Positions 150-47,501 of a stretch of DNA of 63,640 bases are shown piece by piece. The translations under genes were made by a program, and so were the position numbers. The notes below the pieces were generated by a model that did not search any database, was not told the origin of the DNA, and saw only the letters and a list, made by a program, of their open reading frames with translations. Origin of the DNA: Octopus bimaculoides (lineage: Eukaryota); contig NC_068999.1 of the NCBI RefSeq assembly GCF_001194135.2, positions 52,047,590 to 52,111,229 on the forward strand. Direction: 5' to 3'. Positions within the stretch are counted from its first letter, which is position 1, and the number at the start of each line of letters is the position of its first letter.

Positions 150-231
150 CATCATCATCGTCGTCGTTTAACGTCTGCTTTCCATGCTGGCATGGGCTGG
201 ACAGTTTGACTGAGGGCTGGTCAGTAGCCTC
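150..231 (-). mobile_element. RTE-type 3' tail fragment inserted upstream of serpin 1
   Basis: catcatcatcgtcgtcgtttaacgtctgctttccatgctggcatggg is the reverse complement of the tail at 55810-55865. Absent in copy 2; flanked by aaat...aaat. Confidence 0.75.
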
Positions 232-304
232 AAATGTTTGCAAGAATTTATTTTGTATATTTTCTCTTCATATTCTCTATTCTCCAGACACTATCGCATA
301 CAAT

Positions 305-1459
305 ATGGACTCTGCAAAGAAACAAGACATCAGTAATCTTGCTGCTTCAGTTGATTATTTTACAAACAGTCTTTATCAAGCTGTGGCTACAGGAACCAAC
401 GAAAATGTCTTCATGTCACCATTCAGTGTTGCTACTGTTTTATCGATGGTTTATTTGGGAGCAAGACAAAACTCTGCCAAACAGTTTGAAAATGTTTTGA
501 AGATAACTTCTAATCCAGATTCTGTAGCTTTGGCTTTCAAAGAATATTTTTCCCTTTTGAAAAACTCAGATAAACTTGTCACATTCAATTCAGTGAATCG
601 TTTGTGTGCCAGTGAAAAATTCCCTATTTCAGAAGACTACAAGAACAATATTTCAAACTATTTCTTTTCTGATATTGAAAATGTAGACTTTATAACAAAT
701 GCTGAAAAAACAAGAATAGCTATTAATGATTGGGTTAAGAATAACACAAATAACAAAATTACTGATCTGTTACCAAGTGGAAGTTTGACACCTCAGTCGG
801 TTCTAGTTCTTATTAATGCTGTGTACTTTAAAGGAATGTGGGCTGAAAAATTCCCAGAACATGCAACATCATCTAGAAAGTTTTATTTAAGTTCTGACAA
901 GACTGTTTCTCATGATTTTATGTTTAAGTCTGAAGATTTTAATACAAAAATAAGTGACAACTATAAAGTAGTTGAATTACCTTATATAGGAAAAGCTTTT
1001 AGTATGTTTGTAATTCTTCCCAATGAAATCAATGGTCTTGCTGCTTTAGAGAAGGAGATTAATGCTGAATTTCTCAAAGACATTGTAGATAGAAAAGGAT
1101 TTGAAATGACACATCTAGAATTATATATGCCAAAATTTCATTTAGAGAGTAGTTTTAAGTTGGGTGATGTTTTGAAAAAGCTTGGACTCTCTGATATTTT
1201 TAATCCACAAAAAGCTGACTTATCTGGAATGACCGGTGGTGAAAAGAATATTTATGCCAGTGAAATGTTTCATAAAGCATTTGTTGATGTTAATGAAGAA
1301 GGAACAGAAGCTGCTGCTGCTACTGGAATGGTGGTCACGAATTATATGTTGAGAATTGGGATGCAATTTGATGTCAATCACCCATTCACATTTTTAATTG
1401 TTGATAACCGAAGTAAAATGATCCATTTTATTGGTAAAGTAACAAACCCCACAATATAG
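305..1459 (+). CDS. Serpin copy 1, leukocyte elastase inhibitor/SERPINB1-like, 384 aa, single coding exon; predicted P1-P1' Tyr-Met
   Basis: Serpin motifs NVFMSPFS, VLINAVYFKGMW, VVELPY, MPKF, hinge EEGTEAAAAT, FDVNHPF..HFIGKVTNP. Start placed at the ATG at 305; the ORF-track extension from 44 runs through (TA)n and a retroposon fragment. Confidence 0.93.
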   Translation: MDSAKKQDISNLAASVDYFTNSLYQAVATGTNENVFMSPFSVATVLSMVYLGARQNSAKQFENVLKITSNPDSVALAFKEYFSLLKNSDKLVTFNSVNRLCASEKFPISEDYKNNISNYFFSDIENVDFITNAEKTRIAINDWVKNNTNNKITDLLPSGSLTPQSVLVLINAVYFKGMWAEKFPEHATSSRKFYLSSDKTVSHDFMFKSEDFNTKISDNYKVVELPYIGKAFSMFVILPNEINGLAALEKEINAEFLKDIVDRKGFEMTHLELYMPKFHLESSFKLGDVLKKLGLSDIFNPQKADLSGMTGGEKNIYASEMFHKAFVDVNEEGTEAAAATGMVVTNYMLRIGMQFDVNHPFTFLIVDNRSKMIHFIGKVTNPTI

Positions 1460-1622
1460 ATGATATTGTCCTGTCAGAGATTTTTCTCTTATGGAATACT
1501 ACATTGTATTATGTAGACAATGTAACTGAGCAAATTTATTTAGAATATTTTTCAGTAGCATAACTTAAGTCATTATAGTAGTAATCGTGCAGGACCATGG
1601 TCATATCTATGCAATGAAATAT

Positions 1623-1764
1623 TATAAGACAGTTTTAATTTAGTTCTATATTTAAGAGATGCGGAATTATGTACATTATCTACAGTTGACGGATATAAGA
1701 CAGTTTTAATTTAGTTCTATATTTAAGAGATGCGGAATTATGTACATTATCTACAGTTGAAGGA
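1623..1764. repeat. Tandem duplication, 71-bp unit x2
   Basis: tataagacagttttaatttagttct...ctacagttga starts at 1623 and again at 1694. Confidence 0.9.
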
Positions 1765-1787
1765 TATTTGTCATCTTGTTTGTCGTT

Positions 1788-1833
1788 AACACAACGTTTC
1801 AGCTGATATACCCTCCAGCCTTCATCAGGTGTC
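1788..1833 (-). ncRNA. Minimal type-I hammerhead ribozyme motif, near-intact
   Basis: gacac CTGATGA a ggctg-N10-cagct GAAAC GTT gtgtt; AACGTT palindrome suits a dimeric stem III. Confidence 0.65.
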
Positions 1834-1886
1834 TTGGGGAAATTTCGAACCTGGGTTCTCATTCCTAAGGTTTGAAATTTTCCCAA

Positions 1887-1932
1887 GACACCTGATGAAG
1901 GCTGGAGGGTATATCAGCCGAAACATTGTGCT
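1887..1932 (+). ncRNA. Minimal type-I hammerhead ribozyme motif, degenerate
   Basis: gacac CTGATGA a ggctg-N10-cagcc GAAAC ATT gtgct; the cleavage triplet G appears changed to A. Confidence 0.6.
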
Positions 1933-2128
1933 AACAACAAACAAGATGAGGACAAATATCTGTCAATTGTAAATAACGTTAATAGGTTTTAATTTAAATC
2001 AACATTATTAACTTGTGTGTGCTATACATTTATGGAAAAATATTACACTCTGGAAAGTATCTTTTCTTAGCAAGTTTATTATTTTAACAATATACTTATT
2101 GTTGCCTGTAAATGTTATTTACTTGTTA

Positions 2129-2179
2129 AATAAAGTGAAATCAAGGCTTGTAAGTTTTATTTCTGTTTTTATTAATAAA
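2129..2179 (+). terminator. Two AATAAA poly(A) signals of serpin 1 (2129, 2174)
   Basis: Both hexamers are conserved at homologous positions in copy 2 (7286, 7321) and copy 3 (minus strand, 10394-10399 and 10348-10353). Confidence 0.6.
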
Positions 2180-3641
2180 GTATCTCAGTAAATATTTAAT
2201 CATTATGTATGTGTTAATTGCATCTGGCTTTTATTTTCTTTCAAACATAGACATTTGAAATTCTTGAGCCCTCATATTAACCTCAGGGATTTTAGTCTTG
2301 GATCTTGATAGAAGAATTCCATTGATTCTGTAATTTTGATGTTACAAAACTTTTGAAAAGTTAACAGCTAACACGCTATATACATATGCATAAATACATA
2401 CCATGCATGTGTGGTTATGTTACTAACTATCTAATTAATAATTATTTCAAATTTTTGCTACAAGGGCAGTTTGAAGAGTCGGGATCAAGTCAATTACACT
2501 GACCCCAGTGTTCAACTGGTACTTATTTTATTGACCCCGAAAGAACGAAAGCAAAGTCGACCGCAGTGGAATTAGAAAACATTTCCCTTGGCATGTTAAT
2601 GATTCTGCTAGTTCATCACCTTAACTGTCTAATTAATAATGTAGTAAAGTTGGCATTCTCAAAATAACACAAAGAATGACTAATGTATATTCTGGAGTGT
2701 TCTATCTATAAGTGGAACAAGAATCAGTGAAGAAATTCTTATGTACCTTTTTACTTTTGTTAGTGTTACTAAGATTCCAATGATGGGCTTCATTTATTAT
2801 TTACAAACCAACATTTCTAAATACAAAAATAATTTGAAAGAATTAAGCAAGATACAAAGAAACGTCTATACATATCCATTTGTCTATTATACATAATGTA
2901 AATACATTGCAAAAGGCCAGTTTACTACAATATTCATGCAGAGATAATATCTCACATGGACATGCTGTGTTTAAAAAGGCAATTTATATCAGGCATATGA
3001 AGATTGTCCTTTTCATAGCACAAGTCCTGTACTTTTCGAACAGAGATTTTAATTGTGTTCATTAATTATTTACTTATTTCATGGATTTATTGCTCCATAT
3101 TATAAAAGTAATTCAGTCGAGTATTAGTTAATGATTTTCCTTGGTAGTTGAGAAAACTATCTTTATTATTATTATTATTATTTCTGGCTCATCACTCATA
3201 AAAAGAAGTTAAACAAAATAAAGGTTGGGCAACTGAAAGTGGCACATTATACGCCGAGATCGTTAATTAGTTTACTGTACACTTTCTGGAGTCAACTGAT
3301 GAACCCTCTACGTGGTCGCTGGCAGAACCCCTTTTCTACTTTATGCTGCAGTTAACTTCTTTTTTGTGCTACAGAAATTTCAGAAAAAAAAAGTTTCTAC
3401 CATTTTCACTATCAACAAGGGACATAACTCTCGACATACTAATTACTTCACATTCATTGCCACAACGGTCGAACTTTCCTCACAAAGTCTCTTCATAATC
3501 GACAATATTCCATAGTTTTGTCATGCATTATTTGAAAAACAAATCACGGCAAAACTTCATCATGTAGCAGATTAGATTGTTTTTTTCACTTCGTCTTTTT
3601 AGATAAAATAAGACAAGTTATTCAAAAGAATGTTTAGTTAA

Positions 3642-4485
3642 TGTTTATATAAACGTTAACCTGTAAACGACCGTGCGACGGAGAGGTGACGAGAATGGCT
3701 CCTTTAATACATCGCACGGTCGATACAATAAAATATAAGAAAGGATAAATGAGTATAAGTGCCAGAAGGAAAAGAGAGAGACACAACCGGGTTAGAATGT
3801 TTAAGAGAAGATTTTATCTATATGTTAACGTGTGTGCGTTATGTATACATAAGAATAGATAGGCCGTCATGTATACATAATGTGTATGTGTGTGCATTAA
3901 GTACAGACCATCGAAAGAGTCTATAATGTGACGTTAGAAGAATGTTCAGACACAAGAATGATAAATACCAGTCCGTAGTTAATGTACACGATAGTTGAAA
4001 TGCTGTATCAAGAAGTTGTAGCTGTAATGCAGAGCCGGTTGAGGTACTGTGGTATAAGAAGTTGTGGGTACAATGCAGAGCCGGTTGCAGGTCGTATTTG
4101 CTGTTAACCATGGTGAAGTAATACACAAACAGCGTGGAGATAGAACCTGTGCAAGTGTTGCTGGTTGGTGTGTATGTAGAGAGATGGTGTTTATGTTAGG
4201 ACGAATGCTGCGTGGATGAAGTGTTGATGAGCCTCCATGTGGCTGCTGTTGAGTCATCGCTGGAACTGGCTGTGTGGTTAGTGGCTAGCCCTGTCGGCTC
4301 ACCGGAAGTTTAGAAGAGACTGTCTCACGTGACCTTATCTGAAGGCTGTGATTGGTTGGGTTGCATCTTGGCGCACAATAGAGCAAGAGACAAATTGCGC
4401 CAATACCAGCCAACCAGAGTAGTGGACACAACAGGTTCCAAAAGGGCGGCTGTTATCTACTACGTCCGTATTTATGTATATAACA
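3642..4485 (-). mobile_element. Probable solo LTR
   Basis: TG..CA ends with imperfect inverted termini (tgttatata / tatataaaca), CpG-rich. On the minus strand: CCAAT, CACGTG and CCGGAAG motifs, then ATTAAA near the 3' end inside an 11-bp hairpin (3668-3678/3712-3722). No TSD found. Confidence 0.5.
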
Positions 4486-5815
4486 GAGAGAGAGGAATTT
4501 CCCTAAAGTCGTATGCTACAAACCGAATGTTTTTGTATAAAGTAAAATAATGGAAATTATTTATTATTAACGTGTTCATTTTCGACCCCGAAAGGGTAAA
4601 AGGCAAAGTCGACCTCGGCGGAATTCGAACTCAGAACATAACAGCAGACGAAATACCACTAAGCATTTCATCTGTCATGCTTACGATTCTACCAATTCGC
4701 CGCCTTATGGGGAGGAAAATTTTGAAAGACAGCAATACATGCGAGAGTGAGAAAGAAACGAGGAGCGTTGCCTTGGGATGTGCTCGAAACGACAGCCAAA
4801 TCTCCTTTAAATCACAAGTTTTCCTCTGAAAATATTTACAATTTTATTTTATTTTATTTTTTTACACAAAAGGCTCCTCTCATATTTTTGAAGTGCAAAA
4901 AATTGGCCAAAATCGGTCTGGGTGGGTGGGTAAGAAAAATGAACTTATGTGGTCTTCCCAATCCGAAACTGTGTTTTCTCAATACTCCCCTCCCCACTCC
5001 CCGGAAAAAATTTTCCTCATAAATTTCTTTATAATCGTACTCAATGCCATTTGAAAGGTGTTTATATAAAATTTCATTAAAAGGGAAAAAATCGAATTGT
5101 GTGAATTTTGCGGAAGTCCTCTCTCCACCCCTTGGTTCGTTTGCACAATTTTTGATTTTCAGATTCATTTACTACTCATTGTTTTACAAATATTACACTT
5201 TTTTTTTTGTTTTGTTTTGATATGGCGGCAAAGTGTTAAACTAAAGATTAACCATTGAGTCTAAGTTTACGGGATCCGGTCTGGTTTGGTATTACACTAA
5301 TTAGTTCAACATCACCTCCAGGCACATGGAGGCCTTTTTAGAAAATGTCATTTTGTTGCAAGTATTTGGCCAGGCTCTCAGCAGATGGAGTATGTCATTG
5401 TACCTGATACAGTATCTTACCATAGATGCAAAATACTAAAACTAAACCCGCTCCATTCAAATTTGTCTCTGAAATGTAAACATGGATAAGTTGCAACATC
5501 ATTTTATAAATGAAACTTTTAAGATATGTGCCAAATATCAGATAAATAATGGGGGGAAAATGGTTATATTAATTAATCTTACAAATTCTTAATTATTTTT
5601 AAAAACTGTTTAAAACACAACTGTGTGTTATGTTAAGAAATATGTTCATGTAAAAGTTAGAATTAGAGTTTGATCAGAAGAGATTTCAGACTTTGCTTTC
5701 ATAGATGTCTTCAATTACATTAATATCTAATAAAATATTTTGAAATGTTTGCAAGAATTTATTTTGTATATTTTCTCTTCATATTCTCTATTCTCCAGAC
5801 ACTATCGCATACAAT

Positions 5816-6970
5816 ATGGACTCAGCAAAGAAACAAGACATCAGTAATCTTGCTGCTTCAGTTGATTATTTTACAAACAGTCTTTATCAATCTGTGGCTA
5901 CAGGAACCAACGAAAATGTCTTCATGTCACCATTCAGTGTTGCTACTGTTTTATCGATGGTTTATTTGGGAGCAAGACAAAACTCTGCCAAACAGTTTGA
6001 AAATGTTTTGAAGATAACTTCTAATCCAGATTCTGTAGCTTTGGCTTTTAAAGAATATTTTTCCCTTTTGAAAAACTCAGATAAACTTGTCACATTCAAT
6101 TCAGTGAATCGTTTGTATGCCAGTGAAAAATTCCCTATTTCAGAAGACTACAAGAACAATATTTCAAACTATTTCTTCTCTGATATTGAAAATGTAGACT
6201 TTATAACAAATGCGGAAAAAACAAGAATAGCTATTAATGATTGGGTTAAGAATAACACGAATAACAAAATTACTGATCTGTTACCAAGTGGAAGTTTGAC
6301 ACCTCAGTCGGTTCTAGTTCTTATTAATGCTGTGTACTTTAAAGGAATGTGGGCTGAAAAATTCTCAGAACATGCAACATCATCTAGAAAGTTTTATTTA
6401 AGTTCTGACAAGACTGTTTCTCATGATTTTATGTTTAAGTCTGAAGATTTTCATATAAAAATAAGCGAAAACTATAAAGTTGTTGAGTTGCCTTATATAG
6501 GAAAAGCTTTTAGTATGTTTGTAATTCTTCCCAATGAAATCAATGGTCTTGCTGCTTTAGAGAAGGAGATTAATGCTGAATTTCTCAAAGACATTGTAGA
6601 CGGAAAAGGATTCAAACTGAGGCGTCTACAATTAAACATGCCAAAATTTCGTTTAGAGAGTAGTTTTAAGTTGGGTGATGTTTTGAAAAAGCTTGGACTC
6701 CCTGATATTTTTGATCCACAAAAAGCTGACTTATCTGGAATGACCGGTGGTGAAAAGAATATTTGTGCCAGTGAAATGTTTCATAAAGCATTCGTTGATG
6801 TTAATGAAGAAGGAACAGAAGCTGCAGCTGCAACTGAGATCCACTTAGTGCTTTGTTCAGCAAAAATTGGTATGGATTTTGATGTCAATCACCCATTCTC
6901 ATTTTTAATTGTTGATAACCGAACTAAAATGATTCATTTCATTGGTAAAGTAACAAACCCTACAATATAG
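5816..6970 (+). CDS. Serpin copy 2, SERPINB1-like, 384 aa; predicted P1-P1' Cys-Ser
   Basis: Same motifs and length as copy 1 (offset 5511). Loop reads EEGTEAAAATEIHLVLC|SAKIG. Confidence 0.95.
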   Translation: MDSAKKQDISNLAASVDYFTNSLYQSVATGTNENVFMSPFSVATVLSMVYLGARQNSAKQFENVLKITSNPDSVALAFKEYFSLLKNSDKLVTFNSVNRLYASEKFPISEDYKNNISNYFFSDIENVDFITNAEKTRIAINDWVKNNTNNKITDLLPSGSLTPQSVLVLINAVYFKGMWAEKFSEHATSSRKFYLSSDKTVSHDFMFKSEDFHIKISENYKVVELPYIGKAFSMFVILPNEINGLAALEKEINAEFLKDIVDGKGFKLRRLQLNMPKFRLESSFKLGDVLKKLGLPDIFDPQKADLSGMTGGEKNICASEMFHKAFVDVNEEGTEAAAATEIHLVLCSAKIGMDFDVNHPFSFLIVDNRTKMIHFIGKVTNPTI

Positions 6971-7704
6971 ATGATATTACCCTGTCAATGATTTTCCTCT
7001 TATGGAATACTACATTGTATTATGTTGACAATGTAACTAAGCAAATTTATTTAGAATCTTTTTTAGCAGAATGACTTAAGCCATTACAGTTGTAATTGTA
7101 CAGGACCATGGTCATATCTATTCAATGAAATATTATAAGACCACTTTAATCTAAATCAATATTATTAACTTGTATTTGCTATACATTTACAGAAAAATAT
7201 TACACTTTTTAAAGTATCTTTTCTTAGCAACTTTATTATTTTAACAATATACTTATTGTTGCCTGTAAACATTATTTACTGGTTAAATAAAGTGAAATCA
7301 ATATTTGTATGTTTCATATTAATAAAGTATCTCAGTAAATATTCCATTATCATGCATGTGTTAACTGCATCTGGTTTTTATATTCTTTGTTTTAAATATA
7401 GACATTCGAAATTCTTGAGCATTCATGTTAACCCCTGGTAATTTTGTCTTGGTTTTTGATAAAATAATTACACTGATTCAATAATTGTGGCATTACAAAA
7501 CTTTTGAAAAGTTAACAACCAATGTACCATATACATATACATTCTCAAGGTAGCAAAGAGTATATATAATATCTATTCTAGGATGTTCTATCAATAAGTG
7601 GAACAAGAATCAGTGAAGAAATTCTCATGTACCTTTTTATTTTTGTTGCTGTTACTGAAATTCCAAAGTGTGTAGATTGTGATAATCTAAAAAAAAAAAA
7701 AAAA

Positions 7705-10712: not shown

Positions 10713-11928
10713 TTACGTTGTAGGAATTGTTACTTTACCAATGAAATGGATCATTTTAGTTCGGTTATCAACAATNNNNNNNNNNNNNNNNNNNNNNNNN
10801 NNNNNNNNNNNNNNNNNNNNNNNNNNNNNNNNNNNNNNNNNNNNNNNNNNNNNNNNNNNNNNNNNNNNNNNNNNNNNNNNNNNNNNNNNNNNNNNNNNNN
10901 NNNNNNNNNNNNNNNNNNNNNNNNNNNNNNNNNNNNNNNNNNNNNNNNNNNNNNNNNNNNNNNNNNNNNNNNNNNNNNNNNNNNNNNNNNNNNNNNNNNN
11001 NNNNNNNNNNNNNNNNNNNNNNNNNNNNNNNNNNNNNNNNNNNNNNNNNNNNNNNNNNNNNNNNNNNNNNNNNNNNNNNNNNNNNNNNNNNNNNNNNNNN
11101 NNNNNNNNNNNNNNNNNNNNNNNNNNNNNNNNNNNNNNNNNNNNNNNNNNNNNNNATACTAAAAGCTTTTCCTATATAAGGCAACTCGACAACTTTATAG
11201 TTGTCACTTATTTTTGTATTAAAATCTTCAGATATATACATAAAATCATGAGATATAGTCTTCCCAGAACTTAAATAAAACTTTCTAGATGATGTTGCTT
11301 GTTCTGGGAATTTTTCAGCCCACATTCCTTTAAAGTACACAGCATTAATAAGAACTAGAACCGACTGAGGTGTCAAACTTCCACTTGGTAACAGATCAGT
11401 AATTTTGTTATTTGTGTTATTCTTAACCCAATCATTAATAGTTATTCTTGTTTTTTCAGCATTTGTTATAAAGTCTACATTTTCAACATCTGAAAAGAAA
11501 TATTTTACCATGTTGTTCTTGTAGTCTTCTGAAATAGGGAATTTTTCATTAGCATACAAACGATTTACTGAATAGAATGTGATAAGTTTATCTGACGTTT
11601 TCAAAAGTGAAAAATATTCTTTGAAAGCCAAAGCTACAGAATCTGGATTAGAAGTTATCTTCAAAACATTTTCAAACTGTTTGGCAGAGTTTTGTCTTGC
11701 TCCCAAATAAACCATCGATAAAACAGTAGCAACACTGAATAGTGACATGAAGACATTTTCGTTGGTTCCTGTAGCCACAGCTTGATAAAGACTGTTTGTA
11801 AAATAATCAACTGAAGCAGCAAGATTACTGATATCTTGAGCCTTTGCAGAGTCTATCTTGGATACAGTAATCTCTGGAGAACATAGAATGAGAAGTAAAA
11901 AAAGTGCAAAATAATTTCCTGCATACAT
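10713..11928 (-). CDS. Serpin copy 3, inverted, interrupted by a 380-N gap covering the reactive loop; possible N-terminal signal peptide
   Basis: 11928-11156 translates MYAGNYFALFLLLILCSPEITVSKIDSAKAQD...LPYIGKAFS. 10775-10713 translates IVDNRTKMIHFIGKVTIPTT*. The missing segment in copy 1 is 391 nt versus 380 N. Start codon uncertain. Confidence 0.85.
10776..11155. other. Assembly gap; others at 16750-17310, 26451-26478, 40590-41167, 47453-47462, 56078-56569
   Basis: Runs of N. Confidence 1.
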
Positions 11929-16610: not shown

Positions 16611-19600
16611 TTCACTATCTCCTGGTTTTATGTTATTTTTTGGTTATGAATTTTTGCTGTGTTTGTCATTTTCGGGCATAATTATACATACATTTGCAAG
16701 TGTATATGCACACATAGACGTGTGAGTGTGTATATATATATATATATATNNNNNNNNNNNNNNNNNNNNNNNNNNNNNNNNNNNNNNNNNNNNNNNNNNN
16801 NNNNNNNNNNNNNNNNNNNNNNNNNNNNNNNNNNNNNNNNNNNNNNNNNNNNNNNNNNNNNNNNNNNNNNNNNNNNNNNNNNNNNNNNNNNNNNNNNNNN
16901 NNNNNNNNNNNNNNNNNNNNNNNNNNNNNNNNNNNNNNNNNNNNNNNNNNNNNNNNNNNNNNNNNNNNNNNNNNNNNNNNNNNNNNNNNNNNNNNNNNNN
17001 NNNNNNNNNNNNNNNNNNNNNNNNNNNNNNNNNNNNNNNNNNNNNNNNNNNNNNNNNNNNNNNNNNNNNNNNNNNNNNNNNNNNNNNNNNNNNNNNNNNN
17101 NNNNNNNNNNNNNNNNNNNNNNNNNNNNNNNNNNNNNNNNNNNNNNNNNNNNNNNNNNNNNNNNNNNNNNNNNNNNNNNNNNNNNNNNNNNNNNNNNNNN
17201 NNNNNNNNNNNNNNNNNNNNNNNNNNNNNNNNNNNNNNNNNNNNNNNNNNNNNNNNNNNNNNNNNNNNNNNNNNNNNNNNNNNNNNNNNNNNNNNNNNNN
17301 NNNNNNNNNNTATATATATATATATATATACACACATGTGTGAGAGATATCTAAACTATGTATCAGCTGTAAGCTGCTATGCCCTTCCTTGTGCGTAATC
17401 AGGTTGAAAGAAAATGAAAACCATAAAACAAATGCAGCGGGAACAAATTCAGAGGAATTTATTAGTATTTTTTCGTTTCTTATTTTTCACAGTAAATAGC
17501 TAACATAAGACTTGATTGGATTTGTATGAATCAAGTTTCAAAATTAGTATAAATTTAAATATTCCTTGGATCTACCAAGCATTATAGAACGTTTCTTAAA
17601 ATGATTGCTTTTTCTTCCTGTTGACATTTACGATGGTGCCGAATCTTTATTTAAAAGAAAATGCCCAAATCTTTATGCTTAAAATCTAAACCCTTTTTCT
17701 TCATCTGTGCATCATCACATTCATTTATTTGCCTTTTTGTTGTTCAAACCTATAATCAACCTTGATTGAAGAGACCCATTGATTAAAGGCATTCTAAGTC
17801 GTGACTGCTGTCTTTTGAATAAGGATCTGTTCAGATAATTTGAACAGAAATTGGCTGCTATTTTGCTATTTCTTACATATCAAGTGACCACATAGTGATA
17901 CTAAGTGTTTTGTTGTCTTTGAAATACCAGATGTCATGAAGTGTCTGGACATCTGCCGTGGAGTATTATTGTTGTTGTTGTTGTTGTTGTTAAGTGAAGA
18001 CAACGAAATGTCTGTTCAAATCTCTTGTCACCATTTATCATCAGCTGTCCTGCTATTAGTTTCCACACTTTAACTTCTCAATCGATAATTGCAATTTAAA
18101 TGATAAAAAGAGACAAAATTCAGTAACTGGAATATCGATTCCCTCTTAACAACGAAGGTTTATTTAGCAGTTTTTTCCTTTTCTCATCAAAAGTCTTTTT
18201 GGATACAATTTCTTTGTATTAAATATATCAATGTTATTTGGAATAAAAAGGCGGTGAGCTGACAGTCATTAATTAGCAGGCCCTGCGAAATGCTTAGCAG
18301 TATTTCGTCTGCTGTTACGTTCTGAGTTCAAATTCCGCCGAGGTCGACTTTGTCTTTCATCCTTTCGGGGTCGATGAAATAAGAACCAGTTACGCACTGA
18401 GGTCGATGTAATCGACTAGCCCCTTTCTTCAAAAATTTTCAAGGCCTTGTGCCTAGAGTAGAAATAATATTATTTGGAATAAAAAGTTGTTTTTTTTAAT
18501 TTTTAAATACAGATATAATTTAGAAAAGATTTTGCCATTGAAATTTATATTTATACAGGGAAGAGAACACTTAATAAATCCATACCGGTAGTGATATATA
18601 TTTTCTAAAACCTCTTTCACTGAATTTAATGTAATTCAATACCGATTGTTCCCTTTGCTACCCTTATGGATTTTATTGACTTTATTAGGAATTTTTTAAT
18701 AAGTTTTTTAAATGGAAAATTTTAAAATATATAATCTACAAATATACATAAAAGAATGTACAAGCAACCTGATTGAATTAAAGTTTTTTATGTTCTCTTT
18801 ATTTTATTTGTCTATATGTAGAACAGATATAAAACCTCAGTTATGACAGTAATAGTTTTCTGTCAAAAAATTACCAGTTTTTACAAAAGTAGAACATAAA
18901 ACAGAAATTGGTGCTGGCTGACGAATCCAGTAATTTCATGGTTTGGTGTTGTTTGATGATGAGTCAAATAAATTTATACTTCAGTTGCCAGCTGGGATGA
19001 CGCCTGTTTTGTTATTTATGAAACCATTTTTACAGGTGAAAGTTTAGTTATAGTAAGTTTGTGATAGATTCCAAACAGAAATTAGCTTTTCCTTTACAAC
19101 AATCACACCATATCAAGACAAGGAGACAAACATACACACACTCACACACATTCATATTCAGGAATTTCTCTACATAAATTCGAATATCTTTGAATAAATA
19201 ACATCTGTACATCAATTTTTTAGATTCTTCCTTTTCTCATTCATTAAGTTTTTAAATACCTATACGTTTCAATGATAAACTAATGTACTTAATTTTCTCT
19301 GAACATTTGTATAAACCAAAGAACTAGGATGCTTGCATCCCTTAAGTGACTATAATCCCTTGACTGAATAAAATTATATATATATCATTTCCAAATTTAT
19401 GGTACAGTGATTGACATTGTGGAGGGGTTGCTGCTTTTAAATTGCTTGGTCTCAGAATATAAACTTGGCCGAGCCTTGTTGTGCACTCATCAATTTTTAT
19501 ACACATTTGAGAGGGAACGTAAATTTCCTTTTGATTTTATGCTTAACAGAAAGCGTAAAGCCAGTGGTTCACTACCAGGTCATCCTGCTTCAAAACAAAA

Positions 19601-25092: not shown

Positions 25093-26685
25093 GTTTGACA
25101 GGAGCTGGCCAGGCCAAAGACTGTACCAGATTTCTGTGTCTGTTTTGGCATGGTTTTTACAGCCGGATGCCCTTCCTAACATCAACCATACAGCAAAGTG
25201 GACTGAGTGCTTTTTACACGGCATGAGCACATGCGAGGTCAGTTTTGGCATGGTTTTTACAGCTGGATACCCTTCCAAATGCCAGTATAGACTGGATGCT
25301 TTTTACATGGCACCAGCACTGGCAGGGTCACCAAGTAACTTGCAAGGCAAAGATTCTTTGAAAGGGGAGGAGGGGATCTTGTCTCAAATGATGAAAGATT
25401 AAAGTGTAACAGAGAGACAAAGAGGCAAAAACAGGAGGTACATGATTACCCAGCCAGAGAGAAAGAGAGAGTGATCAAGAATGAGGATAAACAAGTGTGC
25501 TGCTGTAAAGGAGATACATAGTTACCCAGCCTATGCCTTGTGGTGTTGAAATAATTCCAAAGGTTTAATGAAGAGTTTATATTTTCATTCCAGTTATATT
25601 GGTGAAAACAAGCAGCTTGAAGTTCTGAATATGTGTATGACCAGAGGAATCACAGATAATGGCCTCATGCCTATTGCTTCCAACTGCAGAAAGTAAGTCA
25701 GTTCACCATTTATTACTTATGATTCTTCTATCATTACTGCAGTAATATTTTTTTTTCTATCTTCATTATTTGTGTCATTATCACAAATATTACTACATCA
25801 AGCTAAAATACACCCTGCTTACTCCCCCCACCCAATTAGGATCTTGTAATGTAACTAGGCCTACCATAATAGCTGACCAAAAGGTGTCAGACTAAATTTT
25901 CATTGTTCCTATACTTATAAATGTGTAAGACATTCAGCTAGGAGATTTGGGGTTAGCTGCAGTTTTTTATATTTTTGTTAATTAGGGTGTGCCTTTATGC
26001 CTGAAAATACAGTATACACTTCAGCCATATAACCACGTGCTGTTTGTGAAATTTTTCCTTCTTTGGACTTTTCCGTTTTCCTTTCTGATGAAGAGCTATG
26101 CTTGAAATGTTAAAAACCTACTCTTTTTTACCACCTTTACCGAGCATCAAATTAATACATTCCGTGTGTATGTCCTTGTTCTTTTGATTTTGTCATTTTT
26201 AATGTTTGATTGTCCAACTTTTAACATTCGATTTGACTACAATAAATACTATTTCTTTTTCAGACTGGAATCTTTAAATCTTGCCTGGACAGGACTTGAA
26301 CAACACAGCCTTATGTATCTTAGCTTATGTTTACCTGAAAGTTTACTCAAACTAAATATAAGTGGGTTTCGAGAAAATTTGACAGATGAAGGTAAGTTAG
26401 TTTTTAACCCTCTTTCTTGTGTTTTATATTTTGGTTTTTTTTTTTTTTTTNNNNNNNNNNNNNNNNNNNNNNNNNNNNGGGGGGGGGGTTGTGTTTATTT
26501 AGTTAATGTTTCTTTCATATTGAACCCTTTTGAACCAACCCACCTGAGATCACAGCTGGTTCTATGACATAAATTTCTCATTTTGAAGAGACCTAAATTA
26601 AAGCATTCCTTCAAAATTTCATGTTGTTCCAAACACCAGCTTAAAGAAGAGTTAGTTTTTACTAAATAGTTCATTATTTTCAAAA

Positions 26686-33040: not shown

Positions 33041-33748
33041 TATAGAGTTTGTACATAGTGCTGTTGAATCAAGGCATCAGATGTGTGCAGGAGAGAAGAC
33101 TGTGCTGGTTTCGTCATGTGGGTTTTATACATATATAGAATAGGAAGAGTTTCGGTCACCGGTGATTTAACCCAATGGGTATGGGTCTGAGTGCCCCAAT
33201 TGATAGGCTACTAGCATCCAAGTTCACAACGGGGCTGGAGTTGTGTTAGCCACCATCCAGTAGGGAGAGAAGCAGGGATCTGTAGCCTGCTTCCGAGTCA
33301 GCAGGTATAAATTGAAGGAAAGAATGAAACAAAATCAAGGCAAGACAATTAATTTAATGATGAATCGAAGTAAGCAAAAGTAGATTCTTTCTGAGATATC
33401 CTGGTAATGGATCAATGTGTTGATCCACATTTCCATATACTGGGTATTCTGTCGTAAGAGACAAAATATATACAGGAAACGCTTATGTGATGTAGAGAGA
33501 AAATATGCGGTGCTTGAGAAGACTTGTCAAGCCAAGAGAAATCGTAGTAATGGTTGTTGCCAGTCTCATGTAAACAACACCCATTACACTCCTGGAGTGG
33601 TTGGCATCCAGCTGTAGAAACCAAGTCAAATCAGACTGGAACCTTGTGCAGCTTACCAGTTCCAGTCAAACTGTCTAATCCATGTCAGAATGGAAAGCAG
33701 ATGCTTAATGACAACGATGATGATGATATATATATATATATATATGTA

Positions 33749-40589: not shown

Positions 40590-43500
40590 NNNNNNNNNNN
40601 NNNNNNNNNNNNNNNNNNNNNNNNNNNNNNNNNNNNNNNNNNNNNNNNNNNNNNNNNNNNNNNNNNNNNNNNNNNNNNNNNNNNNNNNNNNNNNNNNNNN
40701 NNNNNNNNNNNNNNNNNNNNNNNNNNNNNNNNNNNNNNNNNNNNNNNNNNNNNNNNNNNNNNNNNNNNNNNNNNNNNNNNNNNNNNNNNNNNNNNNNNNN
40801 NNNNNNNNNNNNNNNNNNNNNNNNNNNNNNNNNNNNNNNNNNNNNNNNNNNNNNNNNNNNNNNNNNNNNNNNNNNNNNNNNNNNNNNNNNNNNNNNNNNN
40901 NNNNNNNNNNNNNNNNNNNNNNNNNNNNNNNNNNNNNNNNNNNNNNNNNNNNNNNNNNNNNNNNNNNNNNNNNNNNNNNNNNNNNNNNNNNNNNNNNNNN
41001 NNNNNNNNNNNNNNNNNNNNNNNNNNNNNNNNNNNNNNNNNNNNNNNNNNNNNNNNNNNNNNNNNNNNNNNNNNNNNNNNNNNNNNNNNNNNNNNNNNNN
41101 NNNNNNNNNNNNNNNNNNNNNNNNNNNNNNNNNNNNNNNNNNNNNNNNNNNNNNNNNNNNNNNNNNNGGACGTTAAACGATGATGATGATATATACATAT
41201 ATATTCAAGGGAAAAGATCCCATTACACTGCTAGAACGTGTTGTTTACATTCCACAGCAGTAATTGTTTTCACCTCAATAGACGTCAGTGATTGGTTGAA
41301 ATTACCAAAATACGACAACTTTTAACATGAAATAACTTCGAATATAAAAATTTTTCTCTGTTCTATAAGACAAAATATACAAGTATACGAAGTTTTAAAG
41401 TTTCAGTAGGAAACACACTAAATAAAACAGATAAAAAGTGGCGCCTGCCAAATCAGAAAGATCCCGAAATACATCGTTCATGATGTTATTCTTGTTTTCT
41501 ATCTTTAACTATCAGTAACTTCCTAATAAATCATAATTTGTGTACTTATTCTTCCTTATACACAAATTCAAAATAAATCATTAAAAATATTATTTTGGAT
41601 GGAAATTGAAAAACAATTGGTGTGTTAAGAGGTTTGATATAGGCGCGGATTTGGTATAATACAGGCATAGGCGTTCAGATCACTTCGAAATCGCGGGTTT
41701 TCACCTTCATTCTACATAGTACGAGAGTTAAAAACATTTAAAACAACATTAAGCTTAAAATAAGACATTTTCGATACATTTTCATGTCCAATGTCTTTGA
41801 AAGTGAAAGTATTTATTTCATCAAAAGTAGATGGCTTCCAAACCAACAAGAAAGGGCTTCCTATAAAATGAAACTATTAACTATTGACCTAATATGACGT
41901 TACCATTATTGAAGTTGATGATCCACCAAATACTTTAACTAAATTCCTAATTAGTATGGGTAAAGTATTGCAGCTATCTAATCAGACTTATCGAATGATG
42001 ATGCACAGTAGATGGTGAAATTGGTGACTGTTCGGATAAAAAAATAGTTTATATTAGATTACGGCCCTTACATTCAGTATCCAAATCCCACCTTAGTTGC
42101 TTTCTATCTGCCTCGAGTCAATCAAATATGTTCATGAGTTGATGTAATCAAGTGCAATGACTGAAACAATTATATTTAAAAAATAAAAATAAAAAAAGGA
42201 AAGTTTCGCAACAGGCGATAACTCCCTTAAATCAGCTCAATATGTCTGAAACAAACAAGATTAGTAAACTAAACCGAATTGGTCAGTGGACAAGAAAAAA
42301 AGAATTCTAACATTTCAAAGAAGTCTTTTCTTCCTTCACAATGCACAAATTTATCGAATTTGAGCAATCTTATTAACATTTTTTTATTTATTTTATTTTA
42401 CCGACACAAAAAAAATTATTAACTTCATCAAGTTTCTTTAGATTTTTTTTTTTCTTTTTTGTTGTGGGAACAAGCGGTGAAACAAAAATAATTTCTTGAA
42501 TATGTACCAAGAACAATGATAATTAATCGCCAGAAAGAGGGTTTTGCGACAGGACGAAAGACTTCTCTCTACTCTGTCTTGGTTTTAATCAAACTCACTG
42601 CTCTCTTTGACGAGTTATCTGCGTGCCACTTGCAGAGTCCACATCTCTTTCTTTCGTTTCTTCATATTCGACATGATTTTACAATTTAATGGCCTTTCCA
42701 TCACCAATCAATCTACAATGTTAACAGGATGCATTTTGTCAAACCATAGACACAAAGGAGTTGTCTGTGGCAGGACTGATCAGTTCTCTCACTCTTGTAT
42801 TAAATTTTAGTTAGTCATGGCTCGCTTGTACAAGTTGCCTGCATGCAGCTGATGGAATCCCCTTCTCTTTTGTCTGTTCCTTTATTTTAGCTTTTTTTTT
42901 CTTTCTTTCTTTTTTTTTAAATGGACGTTCTTCCTTTCGCCAATCACTTAATATCATTTCTGGATACATTTTATTGTGTTTCCGGTATTAGAACCACTAT
43001 ATTGCAGAACTAAAATGTTCCCTCTATACTCTTATCTTCTAGGTTATCAAGAGGAGCCCTTGTTAGGGGTACAATGAGAAACGGGAAAGCATAGAGAGAT
43101 GTGCACAGCAGAAGATAGGTGGTGTATTTAAGTACCGTGGGCTTCTTATCATGGTATCCAAACTTAATTAATTAGAGCAAGCTAATTGTAAATTTTCCTT
43201 AGATCAAACCACAAAGAACAGACCTATGATCAAAAACAAATTGTTTCTCTCAATATTTGCTATTCCTTATGACACAAACTTTCACATCATTTCAACAAGA
43301 CATTTTGCATTACAACTAAAGACAACCAGACTTAGGGATTTTTAATAAGATTTATTAATTAAACATAACATATTTCACAAATAAAAACAATTTTATACAT
43401 TCTTATCTTATGTTTTAAATTTAATCATTTGCAAAAACTCTTCTCTTTTCTTCTTGAAGTTTTTTGGGGGTTTTTTTTTGCATTTTGTTTTAAATTTTTA

Positions 43501-47000: not shown

Positions 47001-47501
47001 CAGTACTTTTTTTGTGGCACCAGCATCCACACCAATGCTTTTTATGTGGCACCTTCATCTTAGGATCTTAATTCTGTTATGATAATGTATGTATGATGGG
47101 TATAATGGAGAGAGGGAAGAAGTACTCTAAAATCTTGTTTAACATACAAGGGGGTGCTGGAAAGTTCCTGGCTTTAAGGGTATTGCAAAAGGCCTGGTTG
47201 GAGGCCAAACCTTCTGAGTTCTTTTACAGGGTTTAGAAAAATTTAATGACCACTGCAATAAGTGTGTGAATCTGAAAAAGGAATATGTTTAATAAAATGA
47301 TAATTAACTGATCCTCCTGTATTTTCTTTTACCCAAAGCCAGGAACTTGTAGTTGTGGACATGGTTGTGTGGTAAGAAGTTTGCTTCCCAACCACATGGT
47401 TCCAGGTTCAGTCACACTGTGTGGTACTTTGGGTGAGTGTCTTCTATATATANNNNNNNNNNCAGGTTCAGTCACACTGTGTGGTACTTTGGGTGAGTGT
47501 C

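What the first reader, a model, noticed from the sequence alone, without database searches (positions are those of the whole stretch)
1325..6865. Near-identical serpin paralogs with completely different reactive-centre loops
Seen: copies 1 and 2 differ at only 8 nt over about 700 nt (234-940 vs 5745-6451). Over P7-P3' (1325-1354 vs 6836-6865) they differ at 20 of 30 nt and all 10 residues (GMVVTNY|MLR vs EIHLVLC|SAK), while the hinge EEGTEAAAAT is unchanged. Established: counting from the hinge, P1 sets the target protease; Tyr suggests chymotrypsin/cathepsin-G-like targets, and Cys resembles the SERPINB1 P1 (elastase-like). Inference: a cephalopod serpin array diversifying its bait loop by positive selection or loop exchange on a homogenised scaffold, comparable to rodent Serpina3/Serpina1 clusters.
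Basis: partly seen in the sequence, partly recalled or inferred. Interest (0 to 1): 0.72.

Follow-up and report, generated by a model that had tools for sequence, protein, structure and literature searches.

The report
Octopus serpin array with swapped bait loops
Two neighbouring octopus protease-inhibitor genes are almost identical except for the short bait loop that selects the target protease, because copying between neighbours keeps the body uniform while old, distinct loops persist; this pattern is well known in rodents and insects and is now seen in a cephalopod.

Summary
Window 305-1459 and 5816-6970 are two intact 384-codon serpin bodies of Octopus bimaculoides. They differ at 8 of 707 nt in the 5' part but at 20 of 30 nt, and at all 10 residues, over P7-P3'.

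A recent burst of positive selection in the loop is not.

- **Loop types are old.** Copy 1's loop differs at 3/30 nt from O. sinensis body F. Upstream copy 0's loop differs at 1/30 nt from body A.
- **The 5' body groups by species.** dS between copies 1 and 2 is 0.04, against about 0.2 between species.
- **The 3' end groups copy 1 with body F.** AU tests reject the opposite grouping in each segment, so the genes are gene-conversion mosaics.
- **Homogenisation is partial.** Three beta-sheet C surface patches also vary, almost only by amino-acid changes (31 to 1 in two of them). Two patches align with known antithrombin and alpha-1-antitrypsin exosites.

The copies belong to an array of at least four bodies. 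Only one signal-peptide leader exon lies in the 83 kb examined (which contains assembly gaps), and annotation joins it to several bodies. This is a new member of a known kind.

The parts
150..231 (+). Dispersed-repeat (SINE-like) insertion just upstream of copy 1. Its last 15 nt (CTGGTCAGTAGCCTC) meet the family sequence at the same junction as in O. sinensis body F.
   Evidence: At least 5 further copies of the repeat lie in the window. Only 19 nt across the junction are shared with Os_F, so this is moderate evidence of orthology.
271..304 (+). Copy 1 polypyrimidine tract, the 3' splice acceptor CAG (285-287), and a 17-nt in-frame linker (288-304) that reads DTIAYN after the leader exon.
   Evidence: NCBI model P0001 (413 aa) joins the leader MARIITGFLFLAVLFCMSQQTVS to this acceptor in phase 1.
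305..1459 (+). Serpin body copy 1: 384 codons plus stop, with no intron.
   Evidence: ORF. Pfam PF00079, E 4e-111. AlphaFold2 model, pLDDT 90.5, native serpin fold. Foldseek TM about 0.9 to SERPINB3, antithrombin and SERPINB1.
845..874 (+). Copy 1 codons 181-190 (EKFPEHATSS), the s3A-s4C loop. This is variable patch 1 across the array.
   Evidence: piN/piS of 3-19 in sliding windows. The s3A-s4C loop element (codons 180-188) shows 10 non-synonymous and 0 synonymous minimum changes. It aligns with antithrombin 227-236 and alpha-1-antitrypsin 196-205.
923..931 (+). Copy 1 codons 207-209 (FKS) in strand s3C. These are identical between copies 1 and 2 but variable across the array.
   Evidence: Aligns with antithrombin Tyr253-Glu255 (offset +46), a known exosite (PMC10216295). 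The s3C/s1B element shows 11 non-synonymous to 4 synonymous changes.
1100..1129 (+). Copy 1 codons 266-275 (FEMTHLELYM; copy 2 has FKLRRLQLNM), strand s2C. This is the second hot spot between copies 1 and 2.
   Evidence: piN/piS 2-3. The s2C element (codons 267-276) shows 21 non-synonymous to 1 synonymous change. Strand assignment comes from the model.
1295..1324 (+). Copy 1 hinge, P17-P8 (EEGTEAAAAT).
   Evidence: The protein is identical to copy 2. Synonymous differences at 1315 and 1321 tie copy 2's hinge to the Os_H/J/K type.
1325..1354 (+). Copy 1 reactive-centre loop, P7-P3' (GMVVTNY|MLR), with predicted P1 Tyr at 1343-1345.
   Evidence: It differs at 3/30 nt from O. sinensis body F (GMVVSNY|MSR).
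1433..1441 (+). G|GTAAAGTA inside the codons for G-K-V, a phase-1 donor-like site 8 codons before the stop.
   Evidence: O. vulgaris annotation models chain bodies through this site (...MIHFI|DT...). Real use is unproven.
1623..1949 (+). Insertion in copy 1's 3' region that copy 2 lacks: a 71-nt tandem duplication (1623-1764) and a hairpin element with 82-nt arms (1771-1852 and 1868-1949).
2129..2179 (+). Two AATAAA signals downstream of copy 1 (2129-2134 and 2174-2179), conserved after copy 2.
   Evidence: Downstream homology 1988-2391 vs 7145-7542 is 82.6% identical.
5044..5134 (+). Proximal 5' exon used by NCBI model P0135 for copy 2 (MPFERC...SPPL, donor TTG|GTTCGT, phase 1). It has no signal-peptide character.
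   Evidence: It lies in a repeat and is not conserved upstream of the O. sinensis bodies.
5238..5815 (+). Copy 2 upstream flank, including its acceptor and linker (5782-5815).
   Evidence: 91.6% identical over 580 nt to the flanks of O. sinensis bodies G, J and K, and about 90% to the O. vulgaris body (Ov_X). Combined with gene order, this makes Os_G the positional orthologue.
5816..6970 (+). Serpin body copy 2: 384 codons plus stop, with no intron.
   Evidence: ORF. Pfam E 8.5e-112. 61 of 1155 nt differ from copy 1.
6611..6640 (+). Copy 2 strand s2C patch (FKLRRLQLNM).
6806..6865 (+). Copy 2 hinge (6806-6835) and loop P7-P3' (6836-6865, EIHLVLC|SAK), with predicted P1 Cys at 6854-6856.
   Evidence: The 30-mer is unique in the genome at up to 3 mismatches. 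P7-P1 matches Os_H at 15/21 nt. P1'-P7' matches the Os_A/D type at 20/21 nt, so the loop is chimeric.
7286..7326 (+). Two AATAAA signals downstream of copy 2.
10716..11928 (-). Inverted copy 3. Codons 1-233 are intact. The loop is hidden by the assembly gap 10776-11155, and the C-terminal 19 codons lie at 10719-10775. It carries Met1 to Ile and Pro39 to Leu. An upstream ATG at 11928 opens MYAGNYFALFLLLILCSPEITVSK.
   Evidence: Its 3' end pairs with copy 0 (support 100/97).

Best explanation
**What it is.** Copies 1 and 2 are neighbouring members of a tandem array of inhibitory serpin bodies in Octopus bimaculoides. Each body is one uninterrupted coding exon with its own 3' UTR.

**How the pattern arises.**
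- The duplication is at least as old as the split from O. sinensis.
- Repeated gene conversion between array members has since overwritten the 5' two thirds of the body (helix A to strand s3A, plus about 70 nt upstream). That part therefore looks young and species-specific.
- The reactive-centre loop and the 3' end have kept their older, separate histories.
- Loops also move or recombine as short patches. Copy 2's loop is a chimera: a Cys-type P side joined to an ancestral-type P' side.
- Selection most likely keeps each body's loop distinct, together with three adjoining beta-sheet C surface patches (the s3A-s4C loop, s3C and s2C). These contact the protease and set which protease is trapped.
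- The extreme local divergence may itself stop conversion tracts at the hinge.

**Shown here:** serpin identity and fold, the mosaic phylogeny, loop types shared across species, and the excess of amino-acid changes in the sheet C patches.

**Inferred:** that selection on target specificity maintains the differences, the predicted P1 residues (Tyr, Cys, and Leu in copy 0), and any actual protease targets.
For: 1. **Serpin identity.** Pfam, the AlphaFold2 model and Foldseek agree.
2. **Neutral divergence between the two units is old.**
   - The first 190 nt after the stop codon differ by 13%, and the further downstream flank by 17%.
   - dS is 0.22 in codons 351-384, against 0.16-0.21 between the two species.
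   - dS is only 0.039 in codons 1-212.
   - The heterogeneity is significant: 8/636 vs 33/489, p = 1e-6.
3. **Segment trees conflict.**
   - In nt 1-525, all O. sinensis and O. vulgaris bodies form one clade (95/99), and copies 1 and 2 are sisters.
   - In nt 1051 to the 3' UTR, copy 1 is sister to Os_F (94/92).
   - AU tests reject copy 1 + Os_F in the 5' segment (p = 5e-5). In the 3' segment they reject copy 1 + copy 2 (p = 0.019) and an all-O. bimaculoides clade (p = 0.004).
4. **Loop types cross species.** Copy 1 vs Os_F differs at 3/30 nt. Copy 0 vs Os_A differs at 1/30 nt with identical residues. Argonauta has nearly the same loop as copy 0.
5. **Loop and core are decoupled.** Over 55 pairs, core divergence averages 5.2% and loop divergence 52.8%, with Spearman rho 0.01.
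6. **The same mosaic appears in the gap-free O. sinensis assembly.** Os_A vs Os_F has 0 synonymous differences in codons 261-340, differs at 60% of loop nt, and has dS 0.35 after the loop.
7. **Copy 2's loop is chimeric at nucleotide level**.
8. **Sheet C patches change almost only at the protein level.** The s3A-s4C loop plus s2C show 31 non-synonymous to 1 synonymous change, against 87 to 79 elsewhere (p = 3e-7). Against a neutral 79:21 expectation, p = 0.005.
9. **Two patches align with known exosites:** the antithrombin exosite residues and the alpha-1-antitrypsin/elastase exosite.
Against: - The O. bimaculoides assembly has gaps inside copy 0 and copy 3 and a 2275-N gap just before the window. 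Copy number and some donor sequences are therefore unknown.
- No donor for copy 2's loop exists in the assembled genome.
- Copy 2's positional orthologue Os_G carries a quite different loop (17/30 nt). At least one loop replacement after speciation, or very fast change, is therefore needed. Point substitution under selection cannot be excluded for the Cys-type loops (9 non-synonymous to 1 synonymous vs Os_H).
- The hot-spot windows were chosen from the same data that were then tested, which inflates their significance.
- Counts of distinct codons ignore phylogeny.
- No expression or biochemical data were available.
- The scissile bond is inferred only from loop length.
Confidence: 0.75

Rival explanations
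1. Copy 2 is a recent duplicate of copy 1 (or the reverse), and the loop diverged afterwards by a burst of positively selected point substitutions, as first proposed for rodent serpin clusters.
For: - The 5' 707 nt differ at only 8 sites.
- Loop changes are mostly non-synonymous: 16.3 vs 3.7.
- Within the Cys-type loops, copy 2 vs Os_H shows 9 non-synonymous to 1 synonymous change.
- Loop hot spots of positive selection are documented in rodent SERPINA arrays (PMC12646145).
Against: - Flanks and the 3' end are as diverged as the two species are: 13-17% in the flanks, dS 0.22.
- The 3' segment rejects a copy 1 + copy 2 clade (p = 0.019).
- Copy 1's loop is shared with O. sinensis at 3/30 nt, so it predates the species split.
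- Loop synonymous sites are saturated too.
- Reaching 67% nucleotide difference while neighbouring synonymous sites change by 4% is not plausible by substitution alone.
Confidence: 0.1
2. The near-identity of the bodies is an assembly artefact: paralogues were collapsed, cross-polished or gap-filled from each other in a short-read assembly.
For: The assembly has many N runs in and around the array, and a duplicated C-terminal fragment sits next to a 10-N gap after copy 0.
Against: - Eight differences persist across the near-identical tract, and the flanks are distinct.
- The gap-free O. sinensis assembly shows the same pattern in many pairs.
- Independent protein models for both copies exist in NCBI and UniProt.
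Confidence: 0.03
3. One of the two copies is a decaying, unexpressed pseudogene, and its loop differs through relaxed constraint.
For: - No transcript data could be examined.
- Pseudogenes do exist in the family: copy 3 has lost its Met and a nearly invariant Pro, and Os_C, Os_E and Os_I are frameshifted.
Against: - Both ORFs are intact with the full inhibitory hinge and all invariant serpin positions.
- dN/dS outside the hot spots is about 0.1-0.25.
- Relaxed constraint would spread changes evenly, not into 30 nt.
- NCBI models exist for both copies, and copy 2 has its own 5' exon, which implies transcript support.
Confidence: 0.05

Closest known systems
Rodent Serpina1 (alpha-1-proteinase inhibitor) and Serpina3 (Spi-2) tandem clusters with hypervariable reactive-centre loops
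   Same: - Tandemly duplicated inhibitory serpins that are highly similar overall.
- Divergence is concentrated in the loop from about P7 to the P' side.
- The loop and some body residues are targets of selection (PMC12646145; the older literature, Hill and Hastie 1987 and Inglis and Hill 1991, is from my own knowledge).
   Different: - The rodent genes are multi-exon clade A genes, each with its own promoter and signal peptide.
- Here each body is one coding exon and only one leader exon lies in the 83 kb examined.
- Here the loop types are shown to be older than the homogenised body, so gene conversion rather than accelerated substitution explains this pair.
Human SERPINB3/SERPINB4 (SCCA1/SCCA2) tandem pair
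   Same: - Adjacent paralogues about 92% identical in protein that differ mainly in the loop and inhibit different protease classes (my own knowledge).
- SERPINB3 and SERPINB4 are among the best sequence and fold matches to copy 1.
   Different: - They are vertebrate clade B genes with several introns and no signal peptide.
- This is similarity of kind, not orthology. Antithrombin, a clade C serpin, scores equally well.
Insect serpin genes with alternative loop exons (Manduca serpin-1, Drosophila Spn42Da, Anopheles SRPN10, Pteromalus PpSerpin-1)
   Same: - One constant scaffold is combined with many alternative loops, and variation starts right after the hinge.
- Alternative 5' exons give forms with or without a signal peptide (PMC10513286).
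- In octopus, variation also starts right after the hinge, and both leader-bearing and leaderless models exist.
   Different: [quoted passage not shown]
- The octopus bodies have no intron there.
- In octopus the constant part is kept similar by gene conversion, not by being physically shared.
Antithrombin and alpha-1-antitrypsin exosites on beta-sheet C
   Same: - Octopus variable positions 182-187 and 207-209 align with the antithrombin exosite region (Asn233, Arg235, Glu237, Tyr253, Glu255).
- They also align with alpha-1-antitrypsin Glu199, Asp202 and Glu204, which contact neutrophil elastase.
   Different: - Exosite function in the octopus proteins is inferred from alignment and the variability pattern only.
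- I did not match the s2C patch to a published exosite.
Loci with shared 5' exons and alternative 3' terminal exons (Drosophila lola and mod(mdg4) type)
   Same: If the annotation is right, one leader exon is joined to one of several downstream terminal exons, each with its own polyadenylation signal.
   Different: - In octopus the shared part is only a 23-residue signal peptide, and each alternative exon is a complete protein.
- The comparison is architectural only and comes from my own knowledge.

Membership tests
Serpin superfamily (PF00079) | Full-length match to the serpin domain profile | tested here: met
   Copies 1 and 2 give E 4e-111 and 8.5e-112, covering profile positions 4-370 of 370.
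Serpin superfamily (PF00079) | Native serpin fold: three beta-sheets, about nine helices and an exposed loop | tested here: met
   AlphaFold2 model with pLDDT 90.5. Residues 337-349 are disordered, as expected for an exposed loop. Foldseek gives TM 0.87-0.92 to SERPINB3, antithrombin, MENT and SERPINB1.
Inhibitory serpins | Hinge consensus P17-P8 (E-E/K-G-T-E-A-A-A-A-T/S) with small residues at P12-P9 | tested here: met
   EEGTEAAAAT is present in copies 0, 1 and 2 and in most array members; a few carry Ser or Ala at P8.
Inhibitory serpins | Scissile bond 17 residues after P17, and formation of a covalent SDS-stable complex with a target protease | not testable with these tools
   P1 = Tyr, Cys or Leu follows only from counting. 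No cleavage or kinetic data exist.
Vertebrate clade B (ov-serpins; SERPINB1 or SERPINB3, as NCBI names these proteins) | No cleavable N-terminal signal peptide | tested here: inconclusive
   The body starts MDSAKK with no leader. However, models P0001 and P0003 add a hydrophobic 23-residue leader from a separate exon. No signal-peptide predictor was available.
Vertebrate clade B (ov-serpins; SERPINB1 or SERPINB3, as NCBI names these proteins) | Specific sequence affinity to clade B over other clades | tested here: not met
   Antithrombin (clade C) and SERPINB3/B4 score the same, E about 1e-68 at about 34-36% identity. The NCBI names reflect similarity only.
Serpin genes with alternatively spliced loop cassettes (insect serpin-1 type) | [quoted passage not shown] | tested here: not met
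   Hinge and loop lie in one continuous ORF in every intact body. Whole bodies are repeated, not a last exon.
Multigene family under concerted evolution by gene conversion | Paralogues within a species are more alike than orthologues between species over part of the gene | tested here: met
   Codons 1-212 give dS 0.039 (copy 1 vs copy 2) against 0.196 (copy 1 vs Os_F). The 5' tree groups by species with support 95/99.
Multigene family under concerted evolution by gene conversion | Significantly incongruent phylogenies along the gene | tested here: met
   AU tests: the 5' segment rejects copy 1 + Os_F (p = 5e-5). The 3' segment rejects copy 1 + copy 2 (p = 0.019) and an all-O. bimaculoides clade (p = 0.004).
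One transcription unit with a shared leader exon and alternative terminal exons | A single leader exon with a consensus donor, and a matching in-phase acceptor before each body | tested here: met
   - There is one leader in 83 kb of O. bimaculoides and one in the O. sinensis loci fetched around it, with donor CAG|GTAAAT in phase 1.
- The acceptor (C/T)AG|A plus an open 17-nt linker precedes every same-strand body.
One transcription unit with a shared leader exon and alternative terminal exons | Transcripts that join the leader to different bodies | not testable with these tools
   Only annotation models support this: O. sinensis isoforms X1, X2 and X3 end in bodies A, B and F, and O. bimaculoides P0001 and P0003 end in copies 1 and 2. 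No transcript-derived sequences were in the searchable collections.

The most novel reading that the evidence does not exclude
The array is one transcription unit of an unusual design. A single 23-residue signal-peptide leader exon, about 13 kb upstream of copy 1, would be spliced to any one of several complete single-exon serpin bodies, each with its own loop and polyadenylation signal. One promoter would then secrete a panel of inhibitors with different targets, while body-proximal promoters would give leaderless, cytosolic forms. This would be the whole-protein counterpart of the insect loop-exon system. Gene conversion would do the job that a physically shared scaffold does in insects.
Probability: 0.5. 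Interest if true: 0.6.

Novelty: new member of a known kind. Interest (0 to 1): 0.45.

Why it matters
- **A third independent instance of one design.** Arthropods, rodents and now cephalopods all combine a constant serpin scaffold with interchangeable bait loops. Each lineage reaches it by a different genetic route: alternative exons, gene duplication with fast loop change, and here duplication with gene conversion that spares the loop.
- **Old loops on young scaffolds.** This array shows clearly that loop types can be older than the scaffold carrying them. That warns against reading a loop hot spot in near-identical paralogues as recent positive selection.
- **Natural chimeras for experiments.** The array offers nearly the same body with different loops and different sheet C patches. 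These can be used to measure how much the loop and the exosites each contribute to protease choice.
- **Biology.** A panel of inhibitors with predicted Leu, Tyr and Cys P1 residues suggests several chymotrypsin- or elastase-like targets in octopus immunity, digestion or saliva. None of these targets has been identified.

Tried and rejected
- **Donor for copy 2's loop.** A whole-genome pattern search with up to 3 mismatches found only copy 2 itself.
- **Further leader exons.** A six-frame search with three leader variants over the window and ten loci found one per species region and none in the window.
- **Transcript evidence for leader-to-body splicing.** The protein collection holds only genome-derived models for this family, so I ran no further search on it.
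- **Literature.** Nothing was found on an octopus serpin array or on serpins in the posterior salivary gland. The O. vulgaris "serpin B10" qPCR target was not matched to this array; its forward primer differs from the array's hinge-region sequence by eye.
- **Shared transposon upstream of copy 1 and Os_F as an orthology marker.** Only 19 nt across the junction are shared, so I downgraded it to moderate evidence.
- **Distances on the model.** Coordinates are not exposed, so patches were placed by secondary structure and by alignment to antithrombin.
- **Rest of the window (12-63 kb).** There were no further serpin matches, no Pfam hits in ten of the longest gap-free ORFs, no Rfam families and no tRNAs.
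- **Loop dN/dS as a test of selection.** I rejected this because both site classes are saturated.

Full report
**What is in the window**

The window is Octopus bimaculoides C19:52047590-52111229. It holds three serpin bodies.

- **Copy 1:** 305-1459, plus strand.
- **Copy 2:** 5816-6970, plus strand.
- **Copy 3:** inverted, about 10716-11928 on the minus strand. Its loop is hidden by an assembly gap at 10776-11155.

Copies 1 and 2 are intact 384-codon ORFs without introns. Both match Pfam Serpin end to end. An AlphaFold2 model of copy 1 has pLDDT 90.5 and a native serpin fold with a disordered exposed loop at 337-349. It superposes on SERPINB3, antithrombin, MENT and SERPINB1 with TM about 0.9.

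**Check of the observation**

- 8 differences in 707 nt (234-940 vs 5745-6451).
- 20 of 30 nt and 10 of 10 residues differ over P7-P3' (GMVVTNY|MLR vs EIHLVLC|SAK).
- The hinge protein EEGTEAAAAT is identical.

The loop contrast is far beyond chance (Fisher p = 2e-20). The whole CDS differs at 61 of 1155 nt.

Two points were missed.

1. The body is not evenly homogenised. The 5' 636 nt carry 8 differences and the 3' 489 nt outside the loop carry 33 (p = 1e-6).
2. Codons 263-280 form a second cluster, with 12 nt and 8 residues changed.

**The wider locus**

A search of the whole genome found more members.

- **Copy 0** lies about 7 kb upstream of the window (C19:52039709-52040747). Its loop is GMVMMAL|SAQ.
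- **An inverted N-terminal fragment** lies between copy 0 and the window.
- **More distant paralogues** lie on chromosome 1 (81% identical) and elsewhere on C19 (65%, 43% and 28%).

The duplicated unit runs from about 70 nt upstream of the ATG to about 700 nt downstream of the stop. Its downstream flank is 82-83% identical between copies 1 and 2.

**The leader exon**

NCBI and UniProt models of copy 1 (P0001) and copy 2 (P0003) are 413 aa long. Both begin with the same 23 residues, MARIITGFLFLAVLFCMSQQTVS.

- That leader is encoded once in the 83 kb examined, at C19:52034741-52034809.
- Its donor is CAG|GTAAAT in phase 1.
- Every same-strand body is preceded by a polypyrimidine tract, a (C/T)AG acceptor and a 17-nt open linker that completes the codon.

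The gap-free O. sinensis assembly has one leader and at least seven same-strand bodies downstream. NCBI isoforms X1, X2 and X3 join that leader to bodies A, B and F. Argonauta has the leader and a single body, which is probably the ancestral state.

Copy 2 also has an NCBI model (P0135) with its own proximal, non-signal 5' exon at 5044-5134. That exon lies in a repeat and is not conserved.

Whether the leader really reaches several bodies rests on annotation only. I could not examine transcripts.

**How the pattern arose**

*Divergence along the gene.* Divergence between the species is dS 0.16-0.21 along the whole gene. Between copies 1 and 2 it varies:

| Segment | dS, copy 1 vs copy 2 |
|---|---|
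| Codons 1-212 | 0.039 |
| Codons 213-260 | 0.157 |
| Codons 281-340 | 0.086 |
| Codons 351-384 | 0.22 |

The first 190 nt after the stop codon differ by 13%.

*Segment trees.* A tree of nt 1-525 puts all O. sinensis and O. vulgaris bodies in one clade (95/99) and makes copies 1 and 2 sisters. A tree of nt 1051 to the 3' UTR makes copy 1 sister to O. sinensis body F (94/92).

*AU tests.* The 5' segment rejects copy 1 + Os_F (p = 5e-5). The 3' segment rejects copy 1 + copy 2 (p = 0.019) and an all-O. bimaculoides clade (p = 0.004).

*Loops cross species.* Copy 1's loop differs from Os_F's at 3/30 nt. Copy 0's differs from Os_A's at 1/30 nt with no residue change. Argonauta carries GMVMMAM|SAQ.

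*Decoupling.* Over 55 pairs of array members, core and loop divergence are unrelated (means 5.2% and 52.8%, rho 0.01).

*O. sinensis shows the same thing.* Bodies A and F have no synonymous difference in codons 261-340, differ at 60% of the next 30 nt, and have dS 0.35 after the loop.

The genes are therefore mosaics. The loops and 3' ends are older than the species split. The 5' body has since been homogenised within each species by gene conversion, and tracts end at or before the hinge.

**Copy 2's loop is itself a patchwork**

- Its hinge uses the synonymous codons GCA at P11 and P9, as bodies H, J and K do.
- P7-P1 (GAG ATC CAC TTA GTG CTT TGT) matches body H at 15 of 21 nt, including the P1 Cys codon.
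- P1'-P7' (TCA GCA AAA ATT GGT ATG GAT) matches the ancestral A/D type at 20 of 21 nt.
- Its 580-nt upstream flank is 91.6% identical to those of bodies G, J and K and about 90% to the O. vulgaris body. By position its orthologue is G.
- Yet G's loop differs at 17/30 nt.

At least one short-patch replacement or very rapid change has therefore occurred since speciation. No donor survives in the assembled genome.

**Where selection shows**

In the loop, synonymous and non-synonymous diversity are both saturated (0.53 each). A dN/dS test is therefore uninformative there. The copy 0 and copy 1 loop types are in fact conserved between species.

The clear excess of amino-acid change lies in surface patches of beta-sheet C. 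The table gives minimum change counts over 11 intact bodies.

| Element | Non-synonymous | Synonymous |
|---|---|---|
| s3A-s4C loop | 10 | 0 |
| s2C | 21 | 1 |
| s3C/s1B | 11 | 4 |
| Rest of the body outside the loop, excluding s3A-s4C and s2C | 87 | 79 |

- The s3A-s4C loop plus s2C against the rest gives Fisher p = 3e-7. Against a neutral 79:21 expectation, p = 0.005.
- Sliding piN/piS reaches 3-19 at codons 176-195 and 2-3 at codons 266-280.
- By the HMMER alignment to antithrombin (offset +46), positions 182-187 and 207-209 fall on the exosite region of Asn233, Arg235, Glu237, Tyr253 and Glu255 (PMC10216295).
- By ungapped register from the conserved Trp, positions 184, 187 and 189 fall on alpha-1-antitrypsin Glu199, Asp202 and Glu204, an elastase exosite (PMC12001179).
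- In s2C the variable residues alternate with conserved hydrophobic ones, as expected for the exposed face of a strand next to s1C.

I chose these windows after seeing the data, so the p-values are optimistic.

**Function**

All members keep the inhibitory hinge. Counting 17 residues from P17 predicts P1 Leu (copy 0), Tyr (copy 1) and Cys (copy 2). These are chymotrypsin- or elastase-type baits. Cys344 is the elastase-type P1 of SERPINB1 (PMC11327461). The targets are unknown, and I found no literature on this array.

**Comparison with known systems**

- **Rodent Serpina1/Serpina3 arrays:** the pattern is the classical hypervariable loop seen there (PMC12646145).
- **SERPINB3/B4 pair:** a similar adjacent pair that differs mainly in the loop (my own knowledge).
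- **Insect serpin genes with alternative loop exons and alternative signal-peptide exons:** functionally parallel (PMC10513286). The octopus bodies lack the defining intron after the hinge, so this is not that system.
- **NCBI names** ("leukocyte elastase inhibitor", "serpin B3"): these reflect similarity only, since antithrombin scores equally well.

I file it as a new member of a known kind. The shared-leader architecture is an unverified variant.

**Limits**

- The O. bimaculoides assembly has gaps in and around the array.
- No RNA or protein data were available.
- The tree tests use short segments.
- Selection counts ignore phylogeny.
- The scissile bond and exosite roles are inferred.

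Noticed in passing
window 10716-11928 (minus strand): Inverted copy 3 has lost the start Met (ATG to ATA) and a nearly invariant Pro (Pro39 to Leu). An upstream in-frame ATG at 11928 reads through the former intron's polypyrimidine tract to give a hydrophobic N-terminus, MYAGNYFALFLLLILCSPEITVSK. This is either a decaying copy or a newly made signal peptide. dN/dS vs other copies is 0.14-0.4, and its loop is hidden in the N gap.
   Followed up: partly
window 1433-1441 and 6944-6952; O. vulgaris proteins P0127, P0128 and P0137: Each body has G|GTAAAGTA (codons G-K-V) 8 codons before its stop. This is a phase-1 donor-like site with the same phase as the leader donor. The O. vulgaris annotation chains up to five bodies through it (...MIHFI|DTTIYD MDSAEK...), giving models of 571-1736 aa. 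These may be read-through poly-serpin transcripts or a gene-prediction artefact.
   Followed up: partly
L017 18100-18340 (O. sinensis): An internally deleted body in which the acceptor and linker are fused in frame straight to the hinge, the loop (GMVVSNYMSI) and the C-terminus. It keeps an F-type loop and the F-type upstream junction. It is a relic that could still serve as a loop donor in gene conversion.
   Followed up: partly
L014 4920-5340 (minus strand; O. bimaculoides, between copy 0 and the window); L015 24135-24591, 32609-33065, 35622-36078, 38349-38549: An old inverted fragment of the serpin N-terminus (residues 1-156, about 58-85% identical) recurs in the spacers between bodies. In a read-through pre-mRNA it could pair with the 5' part of a neighbouring body. 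Its function, if any, is unknown.
   Followed up: no
window 1623-1949: Copy 1's 3' region carries a 71-nt tandem duplication (99% identical) next to a hairpin element with 82-nt arms (93% complementary). This is a MITE-like insertion absent from copy 2.
   Followed up: partly
window 5044-5134: The proximal first exon of NCBI model P0135 for copy 2 lies inside a dispersed repeat and is not conserved in O. sinensis. It appears to be a transposon-derived, species-specific 5' exon or promoter.
   Followed up: partly
window 150-231, 4560-4720 and other sites (for example 18287-18374, 33663-33725, 55789-55860, 60167-60292): Two short dispersed repeat families (SINE-like) recur through the window. 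Neither matches any Rfam family or is detected as a tRNA.
   Followed up: partly
window 10776-11155, 16750-17310, 26451-26478, 40590-41167, 47453-47462, 56078-56569: There are six runs of N (assembly gaps), several flanked by TA/TG microsatellites. The long "ORFs" listed across them are artefacts.
   Followed up: yes
O. vulgaris protein P0005: One O. vulgaris family member carries a different leader (MAEVISCLIFLIALSCVSQQTAS) that is closer to the Argonauta leader. At least one further leader exon therefore exists somewhere in the Octopus locus. It was not found in the window or in the loci fetched.
   Followed up: partly
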